A stretch of DNA of 64,000 nt from Zootoca vivipara (lineage: Eukaryota): positions 113,212,001 through 113,276,000 of the forward strand of contig NC_083277.1 in the NCBI RefSeq assembly GCF_963506605.1. Reading direction: 5' to 3'. Made by a program: the position numbers and the translations under genes. The notes beneath the pieces are model-generated. The model was not told where the DNA came from and did not search any database. It saw nothing but the letters and a program-made list of their open reading frames with translations. Positions 4,965 to 45,825 of this stretch are shown here, in pieces. Positions within the stretch are counted from its first letter, which is position 1. Each line of letters starts with the position of its first letter.

Positions 4965-5109
4965 NNNNNNNNNNNNNNNNNNNNNNNNNNNNNNNNNNNN
5001 NNNNNNNNNNNNNNNNNNNNNNNNNNNNNNNNNNNNNNNNNNNNNNNNNNNNNNNNNNNNNNNNNNNNNNNNNNNNNNNNNNNNNNNNNNNNNNNNNNNN
5101 NNNNNNNNN
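4965..5109. other. Assembly gap (N run)
   Basis: Run of n. Confidence 1.
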
Positions 5110-8424: not shown

Positions 8425-8530
8425 TTGGCGCCCACGTGACCCCTGCGGACCAATAGGGTGGACCTTTAGGTTTAACTATGTTTAATGTCAGATAGCAATA
8501 AACTAGAAGCTCTTGGTCAGGCCCGCGGAA
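8425..8530 (+). promoter_or_regulatory. HOXC12 proximal promoter / 5' leader
   Basis: E-box CACGTG (8433-8438) and CCAAT (8450-8454) lie within ~100 bp of the ATG. Confidence 0.6.
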
Positions 8531-17305: not shown

Positions 17306-19983
17306 CTTGGTGAAGCTCCTTAGGACTTTCTTTCAAGTGCATCTGTTTAGGGGTGCCCATCTCACTGAATCACTCCCCACCGTGCTTTCAAGAGCTGTCA
17401 TTCACCACCATTAAAATCAATTGGAGACTTGCCCTTGGCTTCAAAAGGATATAGATTTCACTCACAGGGTTTCTCTTTTCTTTTTTTCACTCTCATTTCT
17501 TCGAAAGAAGTACCCACACAAATATCATCTCTGCCTCTTTTACTGGAGGTGTGCACGGAACGTTGGTTGTCATAAGAGGACTGTTAAGGGCTCCACAGAA
17601 GTGAGTAGGGTTCTGGATCATCTCCAACAAGCCTGGATTGTATATAGAGGCATAAATTGTGTAGAAAATTGTGGATCGGTTCACCTTGAAGAGGGAATGC
17701 TTGGTTCCAAAGACGCTTAAACACTCACCCAAATAGATAAAACTTATTTATTACCAGTGAGTGGCTAGGACAAATTGTTGCTCGCAGTAAAAGTGCGTAT
17801 TGTTCCTCAGCTTGCTTGCTGCTTCTGCTGCTGCTTTTTTTATATAGGGGTGTATTTCATAGCTATGGCTCTAAAATGAATTCATTAAGAAGCGGAAAGT
17901 ATATCCCCATCTCCTGAATTGCAAGGAACAATTCTGCCTTCAAGAGAATTGGGGGGGGGGAACCCAACAACAGACACACACCCAGTTAAGTTGTATTTTC
18001 AGCAGTGTAAATTATTCCAAAATTATGGGAAATATGCAAAAGCGCATTGGCTTGAACCAAAAACAAGTAATACTTTATCCTTATCATTATTATTATTATC
18101 TTACTATAGGTGTTCTCTATACCGAAAGGGTTGTGAGCAAATGTTTTGTGTGTTATTGGGGGAAATAGAGAATTTACCCTCTAGGGTTGAACATATGCAC
18201 ATAACTGTCATTGTTCGGTACAGAAAGATGGTGCAAAGAGTAATTATATATTATAGATCTGAAGCGATCTACACCCCAGTGATGTGTATTGCGTTCTCGC
18301 CAATATCAAGTAAGCTCCACCACAACTACCATCCAATATTCAGGATTAGTTTAACAGGATGTCCTTTTCCTTCTTATTACACCACCAAAAGCATATCACA
18401 TTATGTATAGTTATTCCAATGGAACTTGCTCCCAAGTAGGAAGGCAGCTTTTATGATCCGGGTAACAATGCTAACAAGTATTTGACACATTTCCTTCAAG
18501 TTACCAAGTAGGGAAATGTTAGCATGGATTTAAAAAATAAATAAATGTGCAAGCCAGTGATTAAAGAAATATTTTATTTTAAATTATTAAAACGCCATTG
18601 TCTCGTGCTAATGTGCTAATGTGGAATACTGATTGGCCTGCCTCCGGTTTCTGTCTGTCCATCTTATCCATCTGTCTGTGTCTCTCTCTAATCCCTATAT
18701 CTATCTTATATTTCGGTAAACTTAGCCTCTACAGGGACTGCCACATATCTTCTTCCTGAGAATTCATAATCGGAGCTATTTTGAAGCATATATAAGACAA
18801 TTGCAATACTGTTTCTCGCAGTTTCCCGGACGCATGGGATGTCTTCCCTCTTGACAAATGGTCCCTTGCTTGGGGGTCAGCAAGCCTTGGTCTTGGGCTT
18901 CACGGAGGATCTGTGGCAAAGCTATCTGTCTGTATCTTCCCTTGCCTTGGCTTTCATCCCGTCAACGGCTGCAGCCAAAAATGTTTAGCAAACATTCCCA
19001 TGCTCTTCTGGTATTTTGGAAAGACCCCGCAGACTGAAGAGAAAGCAAAAAGATAACATAACAAATCTCGCCGTGAAGGGCATTAAAAAAAATGAAATCC
19101 AATTATTTAGGGTCATTCGCTCAAGTGTATGACACTAGGCGCCATTTGCCACGTACAAACTGTGTCTATTTTCGAAAAAGGATAGGCTTTGTTATGAATG
19201 CATCTTCTTTTGGGACACCAAATAGCAAAGGGCGATCAGAAGCCTGGGGCCAGGCATCGATAACGAAACGTGTTTCGGGGAAAATAATATCGCCATCATT
19301 ATTAATCTCTCCAACCATTTTAAAAGGGAAGCTTAAAAATGAATATTTACATAATATTATGTAAATATTAATATAACACCCTATATTAATAGCACCCTAG
19401 GTACACTATCATATAGGTGCAATGTGGGAGTAGCAGAGTTCTAAATCAACCCCACAGTTAGTTATACAAACGGGCACGATCTACTCAAAATTAAATGCTC
19501 TTTGAGTTAATCAGGTGTTTAACTCTGATTATCCTACTGTAATCAACAGGACTTTAAAGTGGTTACCTTTTCTTGGATTCTTTATCATGATAATTATAGA
19601 TCCTATCCAGTCAGAGTTAAGCACACTTTGAGCCCCATTGTTTTCCATTTGAGAGGGCTAAAACATCAAAAGAGCTGAAAACCACATCAGAGAGGACTCT
19701 ACTTAGATGTTGTTTAATGAAAGCAACATCTACTTTCCCCTCATTTCTAATTTTATTTCTATACTAGTCCTCAGCCCACACCAGAAGAGATATCCCTGGA
19801 GGGGGTAAATAAATACCTTAACAGCACTGATGTGGGCAAATGCAAACACAGAGGATCAAATCCTTGCCATTGGTATTAAGGAAGTGTATCAGCCCAGGAG
19901 GTGTAACCATCAACTAGCTCCCCTGGCAAGTGGTCTGCCCTGCCCACTTGTTTGGAAATGAGATTGCAATTGAAGCTATGTGC

Positions 19984-20303
19984 CAGGGGTCAGCAACCTT
20001 TTTCAGCCGTAGGCCGGTCCACTGTGCCTCAGACCATGTGGTGGACTATATTCTGGAGAGAGAGAGAAAAGAACGAATTCCTATGCCCCACAAATAACCC
20101 AGAGATGCATTTTAAATAAAAGCACACATTCTACTCATGTAAAAACACCAGGTAGGCTCCACAAATAACCTAGAGATGCATTTTAAATAAAAGGACACAT
20201 TCTACTCATGTAAAAACACGCTGATTCCCGGACCATCCACGGGCCAGATTGCGAAGGCGATTGGGCTGCATCCAGCCCCTGGGGCTTAGGTTGCATACAA
20301 CTG
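19984..20303. mobile_element. Non-autonomous hAT-type DNA transposon (MITE) with an internal 71-bp-period tandem duplication
   Basis: Begins CAGGGGTCAGCAACCT and ends AGGTTGCATACAACTG (degenerate hAT-like TIRs). CCACAAATAACCYAGAGATGCATTTTAAATAAAAGSACACATTCTACTCATGTAAAAACAC occurs twice (~20088-20148 and ~20159-20219). No clean 8-bp TSD is visible. Confidence 0.8.
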
Positions 20304-20496
20304 GATTAGGCAGACAGAGGTCCCTAGAATTCCCTAGAAGCCATGGCCCCAAAACAGTCCTTTCTGAATACACCTGGAGCACTGTAGACATTGTGCAGGG
20401 TTAGCCCTATGCTTGGGCCTTCTTTTGTCATCCCAGTGTGCGATTCTGGTCCTCATTCTCTTCTTCCTCACCCTGAGACTGCAGTCCTATATACAC

Positions 20497-20630
20497 CATG
20501 AATAGTCAACTGTGGTGTCCCGCAGATGTTGGACTCCAACTCCCATCATCCCTGACAATTGGACATGCTGCCTTGGGCTGATAGGCTTTGGCAGTCCACC
20601 ATACCTGGTGGGCACCACGTTGCCTAACCT
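20497..20630. mobile_element. Short palindromic MITE (hAT-like, ~135 bp), apparently nested in an older palindromic repeat
   Basis: The left end TAGTCAACTGTGGTGTCC...CAGATGTTGGACT is the inverted complement of the right end AGTCCA...CTGGTGGGCACCACGTTGCCTA. The core GGACTCCAACTCCCATCATCCCTGAC resembles a common squamate MITE. Confidence 0.7.
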
Positions 20631-22886
20631 CAATGAGGCTCACTTCTGAGTAGGTGTGTATTGGAATGCGCTGTGAGCGAGTCCAATATTTTATTCTCAA
20701 AGTGGAAATCTGCTCAACAAAACCTCGGCTGATACATTATCATCTTACACTGTCCCTAGCGACATTGCACTCTTTTAAGTAACATGTGCCATTATCATCA
20801 ATATGCCAGCGCACCTTTTACTGAGTATTTTCTCCCCCTTTTATATGGGTGGGTTCATAAATACACAATCAAGACAGAGTGGGAATAATTAGCAATGTTT
20901 ACCAACATATGCCACCCACGCCACCTTTGAATCCATCTTACACTCCGGGATTGGGAAATGAAATAGAATACGAGTAATTAGTTTTAAAGCAAATCATTTC
21001 AAATGGAAACTTATAGGTAAAGCCTAATGAACTGCAGAGGGGGTAAAAAAACTAAACCCTGATTTTTATATGACTTGGTTGGTAGCAAGGAGACACAGCA
21101 ATATTTTACTGTTGAGAGAATAAATTAATTAATATGTCTGTAGCAACCAACTGCAGTGGCTTCATGGTTGACTGCATTTAAACGAGATATATGTATCAAG
21201 CCTCGCTGGTGTTGTTAACAAGAGTGATAATAAAGATGAAAAGGATAGGAAAGATACAAAGATGGATACATTTGTATTCCTTGCAGGAGCCATAAGAGTT
21301 TTCTTAGAATTTCTTACAGCCAGGTTTTGTTTCTGTGATATTATGTTAACCAGCAGAGTTGATTAATCAATTAAAGAAAACCACTCACATACCAACAAAC
21401 AAACAACAACATGAGGTTATGTCTACGTGTATCTATTATGACTCCCAATAACCTCAATTTGAAAGGAAATGTGCACACAGTCTAGCTCGAGTTAAGGGCT
21501 ATGGAGTTCTATAGATTTCAGAGAGATGCGCTCCCTCATCCTACCCCTATTTACTTATTCCCACGTAAATGTGTCCGCCTATAACTGCAACCTCAAAGCA
21601 GGTGTTTAAATCTCTCCCACTTGAAAGCGATAAATTTTGCAGCCGGATCCTATCCAGTTTTACTCAGAAGCAAGTTGATGCTTAACTTGGACTGAATCGT
21701 TTTCCTATATTTGGAAACGCTAGGCCTTTCCCATAATTAGGAGTGAAGGTGGCTTAAAAATCTCTCCTTTTATGGCATGCCCCAAAAGTTAGAAATCTCA
21801 TTTGCCTTTCTAGAACCCAAATGAAACCACATTTGCATTTAAGAATCTTTGTTTATGGTTGGCTGGGTCTGAAACAGACAGGCTAAAAATACTTTCCCCC
21901 TTTAATAAAGCAATGTGATGAAGGCCTTGTGGTAGTTGATTGTTGTTATGCAAGCATCCTGGGCTATATCTGAAGATCTTTTAAGAATCACAGCCAACCT
22001 TAATCTTCCCAAGGGGGGAGGGAACCATCTTTGTAGTTGTATCCAAGACTCCCCTGTACCTTCTCCAAAACCAGTGTTCACTGGAGACGAGATGATAATT
22101 AAAGGGCATGTGAAAATTCATCTCATTGTGATGAAAAACTATTAATATATTATGAGGCTGTGTGAAAGAAAGAATCATTAATATCTTTTGTATTATTATA
22201 TGAAATAGGGTGGGGCAGGAGGGAGAATCCTAATAACAAACAGCGAGCGCCTTCCAGGCTCACCATCAAAATCTGTGAGAGCTCTGCCATTTACTTCAGT
22301 TGAGGAGTGAGTTCCACCGAATTGTCCTTTAAAGGTCGCACAATCAGCAAAGTCCTGCTAACCGGCACCCCTTGTGTCCCTCGAGAATTCCTGACTGAGT
22401 GGGGGCAAAATATTTGCGCATTCTGCATGCATTTGCGTGGTAGTGCAACTTTCGGGGCAGCGAGGGGGCCATACAAAGCAGCCATAGGAATAAAGGAATC
22501 AATATTCAAAGGAACAAATCCAGAGCTCTGGATGTAAAATTACAAAGGAGAATGCATGTACTCCGTCTTAGAGGTACAGGCTTTAACACCCACAAACACA
22601 CCTTCCAGTAGCTGCTGCTACTAAAATCAAAGGGAGCGGGCAGCTTTGAAATGAAGGCGACGATTAGCCCGCCAAGACCGGGCAATAAGTGGTTGTGTTG
22701 CCGACAGAGACTCGAACACGTTCACCCTTTTTCATGCTTATGATGAGTCTGATTAGAACGTTGTGTATATCCACGCACGCGCGCACACACAAATAAACAT
22801 ACAAACAAACAAACACTCGCTATGCCAGTTATCTGCGTCAGAATGTAGGGATACAATATCAGCCTATCAATACCTATAGTATTCCT

Positions 22887-23020
22887 AGTTACAGGTAGGT
22901 AGCCGTGTTGGTCTGAGTCGAAGCAAAATAAAAAAATTCCTTCAGTAGCACCTTAAAGACCAACTAAGTTTATATTTTGGTATGAGCTTTCGTGTGCATG
23001 CACACTTCTTCAGATACCAG
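22887..23020 (-). mobile_element. Solo Penelope-like element (PLE) pseudo-LTR fragment with 11-bp target-site duplication
   Basis: Flanked by the direct repeat ATAGTATTCCT (22876-22886 and 23021-23031). The internal sequence GTAGCACCTTAAAGACCAACTAAGTT...TATGAGCTTTCGTGTGCATGCACACTTCTTCAGATAC resembles reptile PLE termini (recognised from memory) and contains a hammerhead motif. Confidence 0.82.
22978..23019 (-). ncRNA. Minimal type I hammerhead ribozyme motif inside the PLE fragment
   Basis: Minus strand reads UGGUAU-CUGAAGA-A-GUGUG(CAUG)CACAC-GAA-AGCU-C-AUACCA. This gives a 6-bp stem I, the CUGANGA and GAAA core boxes, a 5-bp stem II, a palindromic AGCU minimal stem III and a CUC cleavage triplet. 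Confidence 0.8.
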
Positions 23021-23039
23021 ATAGTATTCCTGAAAGGGC

Positions 23040-23105
23040 AGGATCCAGTCAAAGTGAAGCGCTTGTAAGTCCCCTTGTTGTCGATTAAGCACGTGCTTAA
23101 TTTTT
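23040..23105. repeat. Fragment of a second related ancient palindromic repeat family; similar pieces at ~19480-19580, ~19600-19665 and ~21595-21650
   Basis: GGATCCAGTCAAAGTGAAGCGCTTGTAAGTCCCCTTG...TTAAGCACGTGCTTAA resembles ATCCAGTCAGAGTTAAGCACACTTTGAGCCCCATTG at ~19605. Confidence 0.4.
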
Positions 23106-24015
23106 CCTCACTGAAATTAATTGGTTTTTGGTCGTGCCCTTCCTAGATACTCATCTATATAAACGACTGGCGGTATGCAGCGCTGATTTTAAAAGTTCTG
23201 AGTTTGTGAAAGATGCAGTAACTTGGTAGCCATTATTACTCGGTTGGTTTAAAGGGGAGTAAAATTACTTAAATGGAGACATTCGCTTAATACGTGCAGT
23301 GGATCGGGATCCATGACCCGTCTATCGATAGCGCTCCATTACGTCGAGGTAACTGACACGCAAAAATTTATGTTAAATAAATTATATTATATGATCAGGT
23401 ACAGTCTCGATACCGCCCCCGCCCCCGCCCCCCCACAAAACAGCCGCCGCCACCATACAAGGCTGAACTCCCCTCACTGACAATCGAGCGTTTTCCTGGG
23501 CCCAAACACTACATTTCGAAAAGCAAAACTAAACCTATTTTCTGCACTCTGATAAACTTTTTGCCATTGTTGTGATTTGGCTGCTGCGGAAATGGCGAGT
23601 CAGAAGACTCTCGTTGCCTTCCTTAAAAAGGAAAGAAGGAGAAGGGTACACGCGCTTTCTTTTAACACTTTCGATTTCAGATTGCCGTAAACAAAACATT
23701 CTATAGATTTAAATAAAAGCAGAGGCGATTTTCTGAATGACCTCCTGCATTAAAATTAGAGTGAATTCGTAAATCGTCCGTCCTCGTCATCATAATAAAA
23801 AAATGCTGTTTTTTAAAAGAATCTGGACAGAAAAAATCATTAGGAGAAGCGCCAGCCACCCCCCACCCAGTCACCCTCGCTCTACCTCAAGGCCACATTC
23901 AACAACAACAGCTCCGAACGCTGTAATCTATACGAAGCCCAGCGTTGGAGGATCCCCTCTTAACAACCCTTTAATACACCAAACTAAACATCTGGGGAGA
24001 CCTTTGTTGATCTCC

Positions 24016-24186
24016 NNNNNNNNNNNNNNNNNNNNNNNNNNNNNNNNNNNNNNNNNNNNNNNNNNNNNNNNNNNNNNNNNNNNNNNNNNNNNNNNNNNNN
24101 NNNNNNNNNNNNNNNNNNNNNNNNNNNNNNNNNNNNNNNNNNNNNNNNNNNNNNNNNNNNNNNNNNNNNNNNNNNNNNNNNNNNNN
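24016..24186. other. Assembly gap (N run)
   Basis: Run of n. Confidence 1.
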
Positions 24187-34361: not shown

Positions 34362-35040
34362 ATGTTTAACTCAGTGAACCTAGGAAACTTCTGCTCCCAG
34401 TCGCGCAAAGAGCGGAGTGCTGACTTTGGAGAGAGAGCAGGTTGCGCTTCCAATCTCTACCTCCCCAGCTGCACCTATTACGTCCCAGAATTTTCAACTG
34501 TGTCATCTTTCTTGCCACAGGGCCCCTCTCGCCAAATCTCCTACCCTTATTCCACTAACCTCTCTCAAGTGCAGCCAGTGCGAGAGGTTTCCTACGGGCT
34601 AGACCCCTCGAATAAATGGCACCATAGAAGCAATTACGCCTCGTGTTATTCCGCGGAAGATCTGATGCACAGGGATTGCCTCCCGCCTTCCACCATGACC
34701 GAAATGCTAATGAAAAACGAAAGCGTGTACAGCCACCACCACCACCCCAGCTCCAACCACCCGGCTTCCACGGGCTTCTACTCCAGCATGAACAAAAACA
34801 GTGTCCTCCCGCAAGGCTTCGACCGGTTCTTCGAAAACGCCTACTGCTCCACCGAGAACCCGCCCGAGACCTGTTTGCAGAAGACCGAGAGCAAGCTGGA
34901 GACCGACTCCCAGCCCACCGCGCTGTCATCCCGCGGCGACCAAGGCGTAGACCCGGAAGACGAGGAAGAAAACACCAACCCGGGCTCTTCAGCTTCATCC
35001 TCCTCTGTCAACAAGGAAGGGAGCAAAACCAGCAACTCGA
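34362..35040 (+). CDS. HOXC11: Homeobox C11, coding exon 1 (donor A|GTAGGT at 35041)
   Basis: [18 protein letters not shown]...[23 protein letters not shown]...[14 protein letters not shown] is the HOXC11 N-terminal region. Only the GT at 35041 gives the phase-1 junction that keeps the homeodomain in frame. Confidence 0.96.
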
Positions 35041-40513: not shown

Positions 40514-40643
40514 NNNNNNNNNNNNNNNNNNNNNNNNNNNNNNNNNNNNNNNNNNNNNNNNNNNNNNNNNNNNNNNNNNNNNNNNNNNNNNNNNNNNNNN
40601 NNNNNNNNNNNNNNNNNNNNNNNNNNNNNNNNNNNNNNNNNNN
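40514..40643. other. Assembly gap (N run)
   Basis: Run of n. Confidence 1.
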
Positions 40644-45675: not shown

Positions 45676-45825
45676 NNNNNNNNNNNNNNNNNNNNNNNNN
45701 NNNNNNNNNNNNNNNNNNNNNNNNNNNNNNNNNNNNNNNNNNNNNNNNNNNNNNNNNNNNNNNNNNNNNNNNNNNNNNNNNNNNNNNNNNNNNNNNNNNN
45801 NNNNNNNNNNNNNNNNNNNNNNNNN
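45676..45825. other. Assembly gap (N run)
   Basis: Run of n. Confidence 1.

What the first reader, a model, noticed from the sequence alone, without database searches (positions are those of the whole stretch)
22876..23031. Intact hammerhead ribozyme inserted in the HoxC cluster on the HOTAIR-syntenic antisense strand
Seen: a 134-bp insert (22887-23020) bounded by a perfect 11-bp direct repeat ATAGTATTCCT. Its minus strand (23019->22978) reads UGGUAU CUGAAGA A GUGUG-CAUG-CACAC GAA AGCU C^AUACCA. That gives a perfect 6-bp stem I, both catalytic boxes, a 5-bp stem II, one extra A after A9, a palindromic minimal stem III (AGCU) and a CUC cleavage triplet. The predicted cut is between + coordinates 22984 and 22983. 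A second stem (GTTGGTCT 22907-22914 / AGACCAAC 22957-22964) lies 3' of it on the minus strand. Established: minimal type I hammerheads with palindromic helix III occur in Penelope-like element pseudo-LTRs and usually cleave as dimers, and mammalian HOTAIR is transcribed antisense from the HOXC12-HOXC11 interval. Inference: this is a young insertion that would place a self-cleaving RNA motif in the sense orientation of any HOTAIR-like antisense transcript. It could truncate or destabilise that RNA, possibly in trans through dimerisation with transcripts of other genomic copies. It may also simply be a neutral insertion.
Basis: partly seen in the sequence, partly recalled or inferred. Interest (0 to 1): 0.8.

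Follow-up and report, generated by a model that had tools for sequence, protein, structure and literature searches.

The report
Penelope-type hammerhead retroposon copy in HoxC
This is one ordinary copy of a very abundant lizard mobile element that carries a minimal hammerhead ribozyme motif; it happens to sit between HOXC12 and HOXC11, and I found no sign that it is transcribed there or cuts any RNA.

Summary
A 134-bp insert (22887-23020) lies between perfect 11-bp direct repeats. Its minus strand reads as a minimal type I hammerhead. It shows three of the four hallmarks listed for Penelope-like-element (PLE) hammerheads: an extra base after A9, a G10.1-C11.1 pair and a palindromic AGCU in place of helix III. 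The site lies between HOXC12 and HOXC11, antisense to the Hox genes.

It is not special. Public reads show that the insert belongs to a huge, young family: summed contig depth is about 1,000,000 against about 4 for the flanks. Other copies stop matching at the insert's own edges. An RNA run gave thousands of family reads on the insert and none on the unique flanks, and no pile-up of read ends at the predicted cut. Rfam models do not detect it, because helix III is missing.

Published work reports such motifs inactive as monomers, weak as dimers and, in an Anolis PLE, protein-dependent. HOTAIR transcripts are not documented outside mammals in the paper I read.

Verdict: a neutral, dead-on-arrival PLE-derived insertion of a known kind. 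This scan has already noted the family many times elsewhere in this genome.

The parts
22876..22886 (.). Left copy of the target-site duplication, ATAGTATTCCT
   Evidence: family D1, 100% identity. It contains an ATT, and the local sequence is 66% A+T.
22887..23020 (-). 134-bp retroposed insert. The element's sense strand is the window's minus strand.
   Evidence: Summed contig depth on exactly this bin is about 1.06 million against 4.4 on single-copy flanks in organism A, 272,000 against 10.9 in B and 444,000 against 10.6 in D. Loose ends of other copies fall at 22885-22888 and at 23011-23017. No reading frame is open across it.
22978..23019 (-). Minimal type I hammerhead motif: stem I, CUGAAGA, extra A, 5-bp stem II with a CAUG loop, GAA, palindromic AGCU, C17, and the stem I return strand
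   Evidence: The features match the PLE min-HHR hallmarks in PMC4209133 and the architecture of the Anolis Poseidon_Ac hammerhead.
22983..22984 (-). Predicted cleavage site, after C17 (22984) and before A1.1 (22983)
   Evidence: Position follows from the motif. No pile-up of read starts or ends was reported anywhere on the stretch in the RNA run (table 6).
22907..22964 (-). 8-bp stem (arms 22907-22914 and 22957-22964) closing a 42-nt loop, lying 3' of the hammerhead in the element's sense
   Evidence: By analogy only, it may correspond to the structured region before the reverse-transcription start described for the Anolis PLE.
22887..22916 (-). A+C-rich 3' terminus of the element (20 of 30 bases are A or C), the presumed reverse-transcription start
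   Evidence: for composition. Other copies end here. The analogy is with the AC-rich internal RT start of PAc.
23018..23020 (.). Three junction letters (CAG on +) that most other copies do not share. They supply base pairs 5 and 6 of stem I in this copy.
   Evidence: Loose ends 'behind 23017' in all four runs. ATACC occurs at 22871-22875 and 23014-23018, giving a 5' junction microhomology.
23021..23031 (.). Right copy of the target-site duplication, ATAGTATTCCT

Best explanation
The 134-bp insert is a dead-on-arrival copy of a very abundant, recently active family of short retroposons. The family derives from the hammerhead-bearing end region of a Penelope-like element (PLE), either the pLTR-to-RT-start piece or, equivalently, a solo monomer of a non-LTR retrozyme. 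The inferred mechanism runs as follows. A PLE endonuclease/reverse transcriptase nicked the + strand after ...TATTCCT in an AT-rich site. It began cDNA synthesis at the family's fixed A+C-rich 3' end (22887). It copied through the 8-bp stem region and the hammerhead, and stopped just 5' of stem I (23017). The 5' end was joined at an ATACC microhomology with two or three extra letters, and the staggered second nick gave the 11-bp duplication. The hammerhead is a passenger of the element's own life cycle. As a single copy without helix III it should not cleave by itself, and at this locus it appears untranscribed. Its position between HOXC12 and HOXC11 is incidental. Shown here: the motif, the TSD, family abundance, family boundaries, absence of flank RNA, and absence of a read-end pile-up. 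Inferred: the PLE machinery, the order of insertion steps, and inactivity.
For: The motif and TSD were read directly, and a chance match is unlikely (0.01 expected). Three of the four published hallmarks of PLE minimal hammerheads are present in this copy: a base between positions 9 and 10.1, G10.1-C11.1, and palindromic 15.2-16.2 (PMC4209133). The fourth, covariation within a family, needs other copies. The Anolis Poseidon_Ac hammerhead, read from the paper's File S1, has the same layout: CUGAGGA-U-stem II-GAA-ACGU-C. Its reverse transcription starts 85-119 nt into the ORF in an AC-rich stem-loop, which is about 55-89 nt beyond its cut, against 97 nt here. Summed contig depth on the insert bin is 10^4-10^5 times that of the flanks in three species. 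Other copies diverge at 22885-22888 and 23011-23017, which are the insert's own ends. Across the whole 4-kb stretch, repeats included, 6,623 of 18,672 laid contigs in organism A are at least 99% alike, which fits a young family. A contig from another individual crosses the left junction with no differences (record 21). RNA depth was 863 and 2,718 on the insert and 0 on the unique flanks, with no begin/end pile-ups. No ORF spans the insert, no tRNA-like structure was found, and there is no second copy or tandem partner in the window. TE invasion of Anolis Hox clusters is documented (PMC6791295), and the same intergenic region holds at least two other high-copy repeats.
Against: There was no direct homology test against a PLE that carries an RT/GIY-YIG ORF, because no Repbase or Dfam library was available. 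The only PLE consensus in hand (Poseidon_Ac) shares architecture but not sequence. Rfam gives no hammerhead hit even at E<=10. The segment is non-coding here, whereas in Poseidon_Ac the same segment overlaps the ORF start. The parent may therefore be a non-autonomous lineage rather than an autonomous PLE. Only one RNA run, of unknown tissue and sampled at about 6%, was laid, so absence of locus transcription is weak evidence. Summed depth is not a copy number.
Confidence: 0.85

Rival explanations
1. One reading: the insertion places an active self-cleaving motif in a HOTAIR-like antisense HoxC transcript. It truncates or destabilises that RNA, possibly by pairing in trans with abundant transcripts of other copies.
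For: The orientation and interval are right. The core is intact. Family RNA is abundant in the one run laid, so a trans partner could exist. Dimeric cleavage of such motifs has been shown in vitro at low rates.
Against: No RNA read fell on the unique flanks on either strand. No read-end pile-up occurred at the cut site among thousands of family reads, matching what was reported for the Anolis PLE. The AGCU/AGCU helix III is worth only about -3.9 kcal/mol, while the favoured dimer swaps the 14-nt palindromic helix II and lacks helix III. The Anolis PLE hammerhead needs its own protein. HOTAIR was not detected in chicken.
Confidence: 0.03
2. The unit is a full-length copy of a discrete non-autonomous element, a retrozyme monomer or SINE-like parasite of PLEs with its own defined 5' end at the hammerhead. 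On this reading it is not a random 5' truncation of an autonomous PLE. This is a sub-variant of the best explanation rather than an opposite to it.
For: Many other copies stop at the same place, 23017. The segment is non-coding. Reptile non-LTR retrozyme consensus lengths average 176 bp, and solo monomers are dispersed (bioRxiv 10.64898/2026.07.22.740005). Unchecked earlier scan notes describe about 130-bp copies and tandem 138-nt units in this genome.
Against: The letters beyond 23017 in other copies show a partly shared continuation (ACTGAAACAG..., agreement 0.4-0.55) in all four runs. At least part of the family is therefore longer. There is no tandem partner at this locus. I could not align other copies.
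Confidence: 0.4
3. The hammerhead-like motif is a chance resemblance inside an unrelated repeat, for example a tRNA-derived SINE read on the + strand.
For: There is no Rfam hit. The folding z-scores are modest: -2.0 for the 48-nt motif and -1.3 for the whole insert. A weak A-box-like string, TAGCCGTGTTGG, lies near the left end (my reading).
Against: The descriptor match is expected 0.01 times per window. Three PLE-specific hallmarks co-occur. No tRNA-like fold was found. There is no A-tail at either end. The B-box-like string lies only about 4 nt after the A-box-like one.
Confidence: 0.02

Closest known systems
Minimal hammerhead ribozymes of Penelope-like elements (Cervera & de la Pena 2014, PMC4209133)
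   Same: Type I topology. Conserved core. An extra base between A9 and G10.1. A G10.1-C11.1 pair. No helix III hairpin, with a palindromic 15.1-16.1 tetranucleotide (AGCU) that can only pair between two molecules. Mostly found as dispersed single motifs.
   Different: The exact sequence family was not matched to any published one here. In this copy two of the six stem I pairs come from junction letters.
Poseidon_Ac (PAc) of Anolis carolinensis (Frangieh et al. 2024, PMC11167929)
   Same: The same hammerhead layout. An A+C-rich 3' end of the inserted unit at a distance from the hammerhead of the same order. An AT-rich target containing ATT. No read ends at the cleavage site in RNA-seq.
   Different: There is no sequence similarity by eye. 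In PAc the hammerhead-to-RT-start segment overlaps the ORF start (the AUG at stem II opens a 2.5-kb ORF). Here the AUG in loop II meets a stop after 9 codons and no frame is open.
Non-LTR retrozymes of animals (Cervera & de la Pena 2020, PMC7229834; Li et al. 2026 preprint)
   Same: Short, non-coding, hammerhead-bearing units related to PLE pLTRs. Solo monomers are scattered, mainly in intergenic DNA. TSDs are longer than 4 bp.
   Different: Retrozymes are defined by tandem units that give circular RNA, and this locus has a single unit. Classical retrozyme hammerheads are canonical type I with loop-loop contacts, not the minimal form.
Mammalian HOTAIR
   Same: The HOXC12-HOXC11 interval and the antisense strand.
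   Different: No transcript was seen here. No homology was tested or claimed. In the paper read, HOTAIR transcripts are reported in mammals only.

Membership tests
Hammerhead ribozyme, minimal PLE variant | Conserved core: C3 U4 G5 A6 N7 G8 A9, G12 A13 A14, A15.1/U16.1, H17 | tested here: met
   CUGAAGA, GAA, A..U of AGCU, and C17 were read on the minus strand. The descriptor matched once against 0.01 expected.
Hammerhead ribozyme, minimal PLE variant | Stems I and II base-paired around the core | tested here: met
   The MFE fold forms a 6-bp stem I and a 5-bp stem II. Only 4 bp of stem I lie in the part most other copies share.
Hammerhead ribozyme, minimal PLE variant | PLE hallmarks: a base between 9 and 10.1, G10.1-C11.1, palindromic 15.2-16.2 | tested here: met
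   An extra A, a G...C closing pair and AGCU are present. The hallmarks are as listed in PMC4209133.
Hammerhead ribozyme, minimal PLE variant | Covariation in the stems across family copies | not tested
   There is only one copy in the window.
Hammerhead ribozyme (Rfam families) | Covariance-model match | tested here: not met
   No hammerhead family was reported at gathering score or at E<=10. This is expected for a motif with no helix III hairpin.
Hammerhead ribozyme, minimal PLE variant | Self-cleavage at H17 | tested here: inconclusive
   No begin/end pile-up among about 3,500x of family RNA reads. Standard RNA-seq is a weak assay for this, and no bench test was possible.
Penelope-like element derived insertion | Dispersed high-copy family whose copies share ends | tested here: met
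   Depth ratio of 10^4-10^5 in three species. Loose ends at 22885-22888 and 23011-23017.
Penelope-like element derived insertion | Target-site duplication at an AT-rich site, with no poly(A) tail | tested here: met
   An 11-bp TSD containing ATT, 66% A+T upstream, and no A-tail. PAc prefers ATT in AT-rich DNA.
Penelope-like element derived insertion | Sequence homology to the pLTR or ORF start of an element encoding RT plus GIY-YIG endonuclease | not testable with these tools
   No Repbase or Dfam library was available. Poseidon_Ac shares architecture only, and no PLE ORF lies next to the insert.
Non-LTR retrozyme | Tandem units, each with a hammerhead | tested here: not met
   This is a single unit with no second copy in 64 kb.
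HOTAIR-like antisense lncRNA | A minus-strand transcript across the HOXC12-HOXC11 interval | tested here: inconclusive
   Zero depth on unique flanks 20609-22752 and 23155-23958 in one RNA run of unknown tissue, of which about 6% was read.

The most novel reading that the evidence does not exclude
In posterior embryonic tissue the lizard HOXC12-HOXC11 interval is transcribed antisense. This sense-oriented minimal hammerhead then pairs through its AGCU palindrome with abundant RNAs from other copies, perhaps helped by PLE protein, and cuts the lncRNA. That would make it a transposon-delivered, trans-activated ribozyme switch in a Hox cluster.
Probability: 0.02. Interest if true: 0.6.

Novelty: already known. 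Interest (0 to 1): 0.1.

Why it matters
It matters little by itself. It is one of roughly 10^4-10^5 copy-equivalents of a known kind of element, in a gene cluster already known to be invaded by transposons in lizards. Three points are useful. It is a clean worked example of a PLE-type insertion footprint: TSD, fixed 3' end, and a microhomology 5' junction. It shows that Rfam models miss this hammerhead class. And the RNA data reproduce, for a second lizard family, the published finding that no read ends accumulate at the cleavage site.

Tried and rejected
- **Rfam:** scans at gathering score and at E<=10 on the 301-bp region gave no hammerhead hit. I do not count this against the motif, because it has no helix III hairpin.
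- **Other copies in the window:** blastn with word size 7 and a descriptor search found none, so no family alignment or covariation test was possible.
- **Metagenome scans:** two exact-pattern scans, one on the hammerhead core and one on the stem arms, found nothing.
- **Literature search for element strings:** no hits.
- **Papers not held:** Lunse et al. 2017 and the supplements of PMC4209133.
- **Empty site in relatives:** contigs of organisms B and D do not cover 22217-22752 or 23155-23288 at 90% likeness or more. Presence or absence of the insert in relatives is therefore undetermined.
- **tRNA-derived SINE reading:** rejected. ARAGORN found no gene, there is no A-tail, and the box spacing is wrong.
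- **Coding reading:** rejected, with stops in all frames.
- **Recalled turtle/crocodilian repeat:** I recall from memory a similar repeat with a compensatory change in the 8-bp stem. It could not be checked and is not used as evidence.
- **Operators' rules:** N runs were left untouched. The Poseidon_Ac consensus was read by eye only and sent to no tool.

Full report
**What is there**

- ATAGTATTCCT stands at 22876-22886 and again at 23021-23031, bracketing 134 bp (22887-23020).
- On the minus strand, 23019->22978 reads UGGUAU CUGAAGA A GUGUG CAUG CACAC GAA AGCU C AUACCA.
- The minimum-energy fold of this stretch forms stem I (6 bp) and stem II (5 bp).
- A loose descriptor (CUGANGA ... CGAAAGCU) matches once in the window, against 0.01 expected from shuffles.
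- The 8-bp stem 22907-22914 / 22957-22964 is real.
- An 11-bp direct repeat at this spacing is not rare by itself: shuffles give 5-6 per window. It gains meaning only from what follows.

**Gene context**

- Three homeoboxes lie on the + strand at about 10.9, 36.6 and 53.1 kb. I recognise their sequences as HOXC12, HOXC11 and HOXC10.
- HOXC12 exon 1 starts at 8513 and HOXC11 exon 1 at 34362.
- mir-196 is at 55652-55725 on the + strand, scoring 87.4 bits.
- The insert therefore lies about 12 kb after HOXC12 and about 11 kb before HOXC11, with its hammerhead strand antisense to the Hox genes.

**What kind of hammerhead it is**

- Rfam gives no hammerhead match at gathering score or at E<=10. I expected this, because the motif has no helix III hairpin: AGCU runs straight from A15.1 to U16.1.
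- Cervera and de la Pena (PMC4209133) had to use their own relaxed descriptor for such motifs.
- They list four recurrent hallmarks of Penelope-like-element (PLE) minimal hammerheads: covariation within families, a base between positions 9 and 10.1, the G10.1-C11.1 pair, and palindromic 15.2-16.2.
- The last three can be read off a single copy, and all three are present here. The 'extra A after A9' is thus typical, not odd.
- The Anolis Poseidon_Ac hammerhead, read from File S1 of Frangieh et al. (PMC11167929), has the same layout: CUGAGGA, U, stem II, GAA, ACGU, C, then the cut.

**It is one copy of a huge family**

I laid contigs of three DNA runs and raw reads of one RNA run on 19939-23958, binned so that the insert fills exactly one bin.

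| Run | Organism | Summed contig depth on the insert | Depth on unique flanks |
|---|---|---|---|
| X6 | A | about 1,055,000 | 4.4 |
| X12 | B | about 272,000 | 10.9 |
| X17 | D | about 444,000 | 10.6 |

- This is not a copy number, but it means 10^4-10^5 copy-equivalents.
- Across the whole 4-kb stretch, other repeats included, 6,623 of the 18,672 contigs laid in organism A are at least 99% alike. That fits recent activity.
- Other copies stop matching at 22885-22888 on the left and at 23017 on the right (fewer at 23011 and 23013). These are the insert's own edges. This coincidence, not the 11-mer alone, makes the direct repeat a target-site duplication.
- A contig from a different study crosses the left junction without a difference (record 21, 22817-22909). 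The insertion is therefore not private to the assembly.
- Contigs of organisms B and D do not cover the immediate flanks, so I could not look for an empty site.

**Details of the footprint**

- Likeness to other copies ends at 23017, three letters before the right repeat.
- ATACC stands both at 22871-22875, just before the left repeat, and at 23014-23018, at the end of the insert. I read this as a microhomology-mediated 5' junction with two or three extra letters. This is an inference.
- One consequence is that pairs 5 and 6 of stem I (23018, 23019) are locus-specific, and the part most other copies share gives 4 bp.
- Letters beyond 23017 in other copies share a weak consensus (ACTGAAACAG..., agreement 0.4-0.55) in all four runs. 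Some copies therefore extend further 5'.
- In the element's sense, the 3' end is A+C-rich, with 20 of the last 30 bases A or C.
- That end lies 97 nt beyond the predicted cut. In Poseidon_Ac, reverse transcription starts internally in an AC-rich stem-loop 85-119 nt into the ORF, about 55-89 nt beyond its cut.
- Unlike Poseidon_Ac, no frame is open across this segment. The AUG in loop II meets a stop after nine codons.
- The parent may therefore be a non-autonomous lineage, that is, a retrozyme-like monomer. Reptile retrozyme consensus lengths average 176 bp and solo monomers are dispersed.
- I cannot decide between 'discrete short element' and 'extreme 5' truncation'.

**Does it act here?**

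- The RNA run gave mean depths of 863 and 2,718 on the insert (the two read directions).
- Depth was zero on the unique flanks 20609-22752 and 23155-23958, and 0.02 and 0.26 (the two read directions) in the bin just to the right of the insert. The reads therefore come from other copies, not from this locus.
- No place on the stretch showed an excess of read starts or ends, including 22983/22984 (table 6). Frangieh et al. report the same for the Anolis PLE.
- The tissue is unknown and only about 6% of the run was read, so this is weak evidence against transcription.
- Thermodynamically, the AGCU/AGCU helix is worth about -3.9 kcal/mol.
- The favoured dimer instead swaps the perfect 14-nt palindrome of stem II (-42.4 against 2 x -12.7 kcal/mol) and still lacks helix III.
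- Published minimal hammerheads show no monomer activity and low dimer activity. The Anolis one cleaves only with its protein.
- In the paper I read (PMC7139118), HOTAIR transcripts were detected in ferret and dog, but in chicken only the HOXD11 non-coding transcript was found.

**Why the location is not remarkable**

- TE invasion of Hox clusters is a documented feature of Anolis and other squamates (PMC6791295).
- The same intergenic region holds at least two other high-copy repeats, at 19939-20340 and 20475-20608.
- The scan's own index lists 173 notes with 'hammerhead' and 'Penelope'. Among those shown, follow-ups on other pieces of this genome reached the same kind of conclusion. I treated them as leads. 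My reads analysis independently agrees on abundance and on the shared ends.

**Verdict**

The identification as a PLE-type minimal hammerhead in a TSD-flanked insertion is supported. The regulatory reading is unsupported. This is an ordinary, probably neutral, copy of a known kind of element.

The N runs, including 24016-24186 about 1 kb away, were left untouched. No sequence from a paper was sent to a tool.

Noticed in passing
window 19939-20340: Another very high-copy repeat, with summed contig depth of 0.6-1.2 million against about 4-11 for single-copy DNA. It has an internal 71-bp direct duplication (20088-20138 / 20159-20209).
   Followed up: partly
window 20475-20608: A third repeated piece, containing GTTGGACTCCAACTCCCATCATCCC. 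From memory it looks like an iguanian SINE. Depth is 10,000-57,000 and a few RNA reads fall on it.
   Followed up: no
window 22887-23020 (RNA run X21): Family RNA reads are strand-biased about 3:1 (first mate on the minus strand 2,718, on the plus strand 863). The library orientation is unknown, so I could not tell whether the hammerhead strand or its complement dominates.
   Followed up: no
window 22929-23002 (RNA run X21): About 100 RNA reads each show 'opposite strands' joints at 22929/22950 and at 22936/23002, so fold-back (inverted) copies of the family are expressed somewhere. A loose end at 22929 with 0.92 agreement (372 reads) points to one particular abundant transcript carrying a copy that ends at the A-run.
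   Followed up: no
window 22992-23005: Stem II plus its loop is a perfect 14-nt palindrome (GTGTGCATGCACAC). Cofolding prefers a stem-II-swapped dimer over the helix III dimer needed for catalysis.
   Followed up: partly
window 55652-55725 (+): mir-196 precursor, 87.4 bits and E 1.9e-19, downstream of HOXC10 as expected for mir-196a-2.
   Followed up: no
window 23172 and 23412: The contig of another individual of organism A carries a 16-nt and a 6-nt insertion relative to the window. These are ordinary indel polymorphisms near the insert.
   Followed up: no
window 4965-5109, 24016-24186, 40514-40643, 45676-45825: Four N runs of 130-171 letters. One lies 1 kb from the insert.
   Followed up: no
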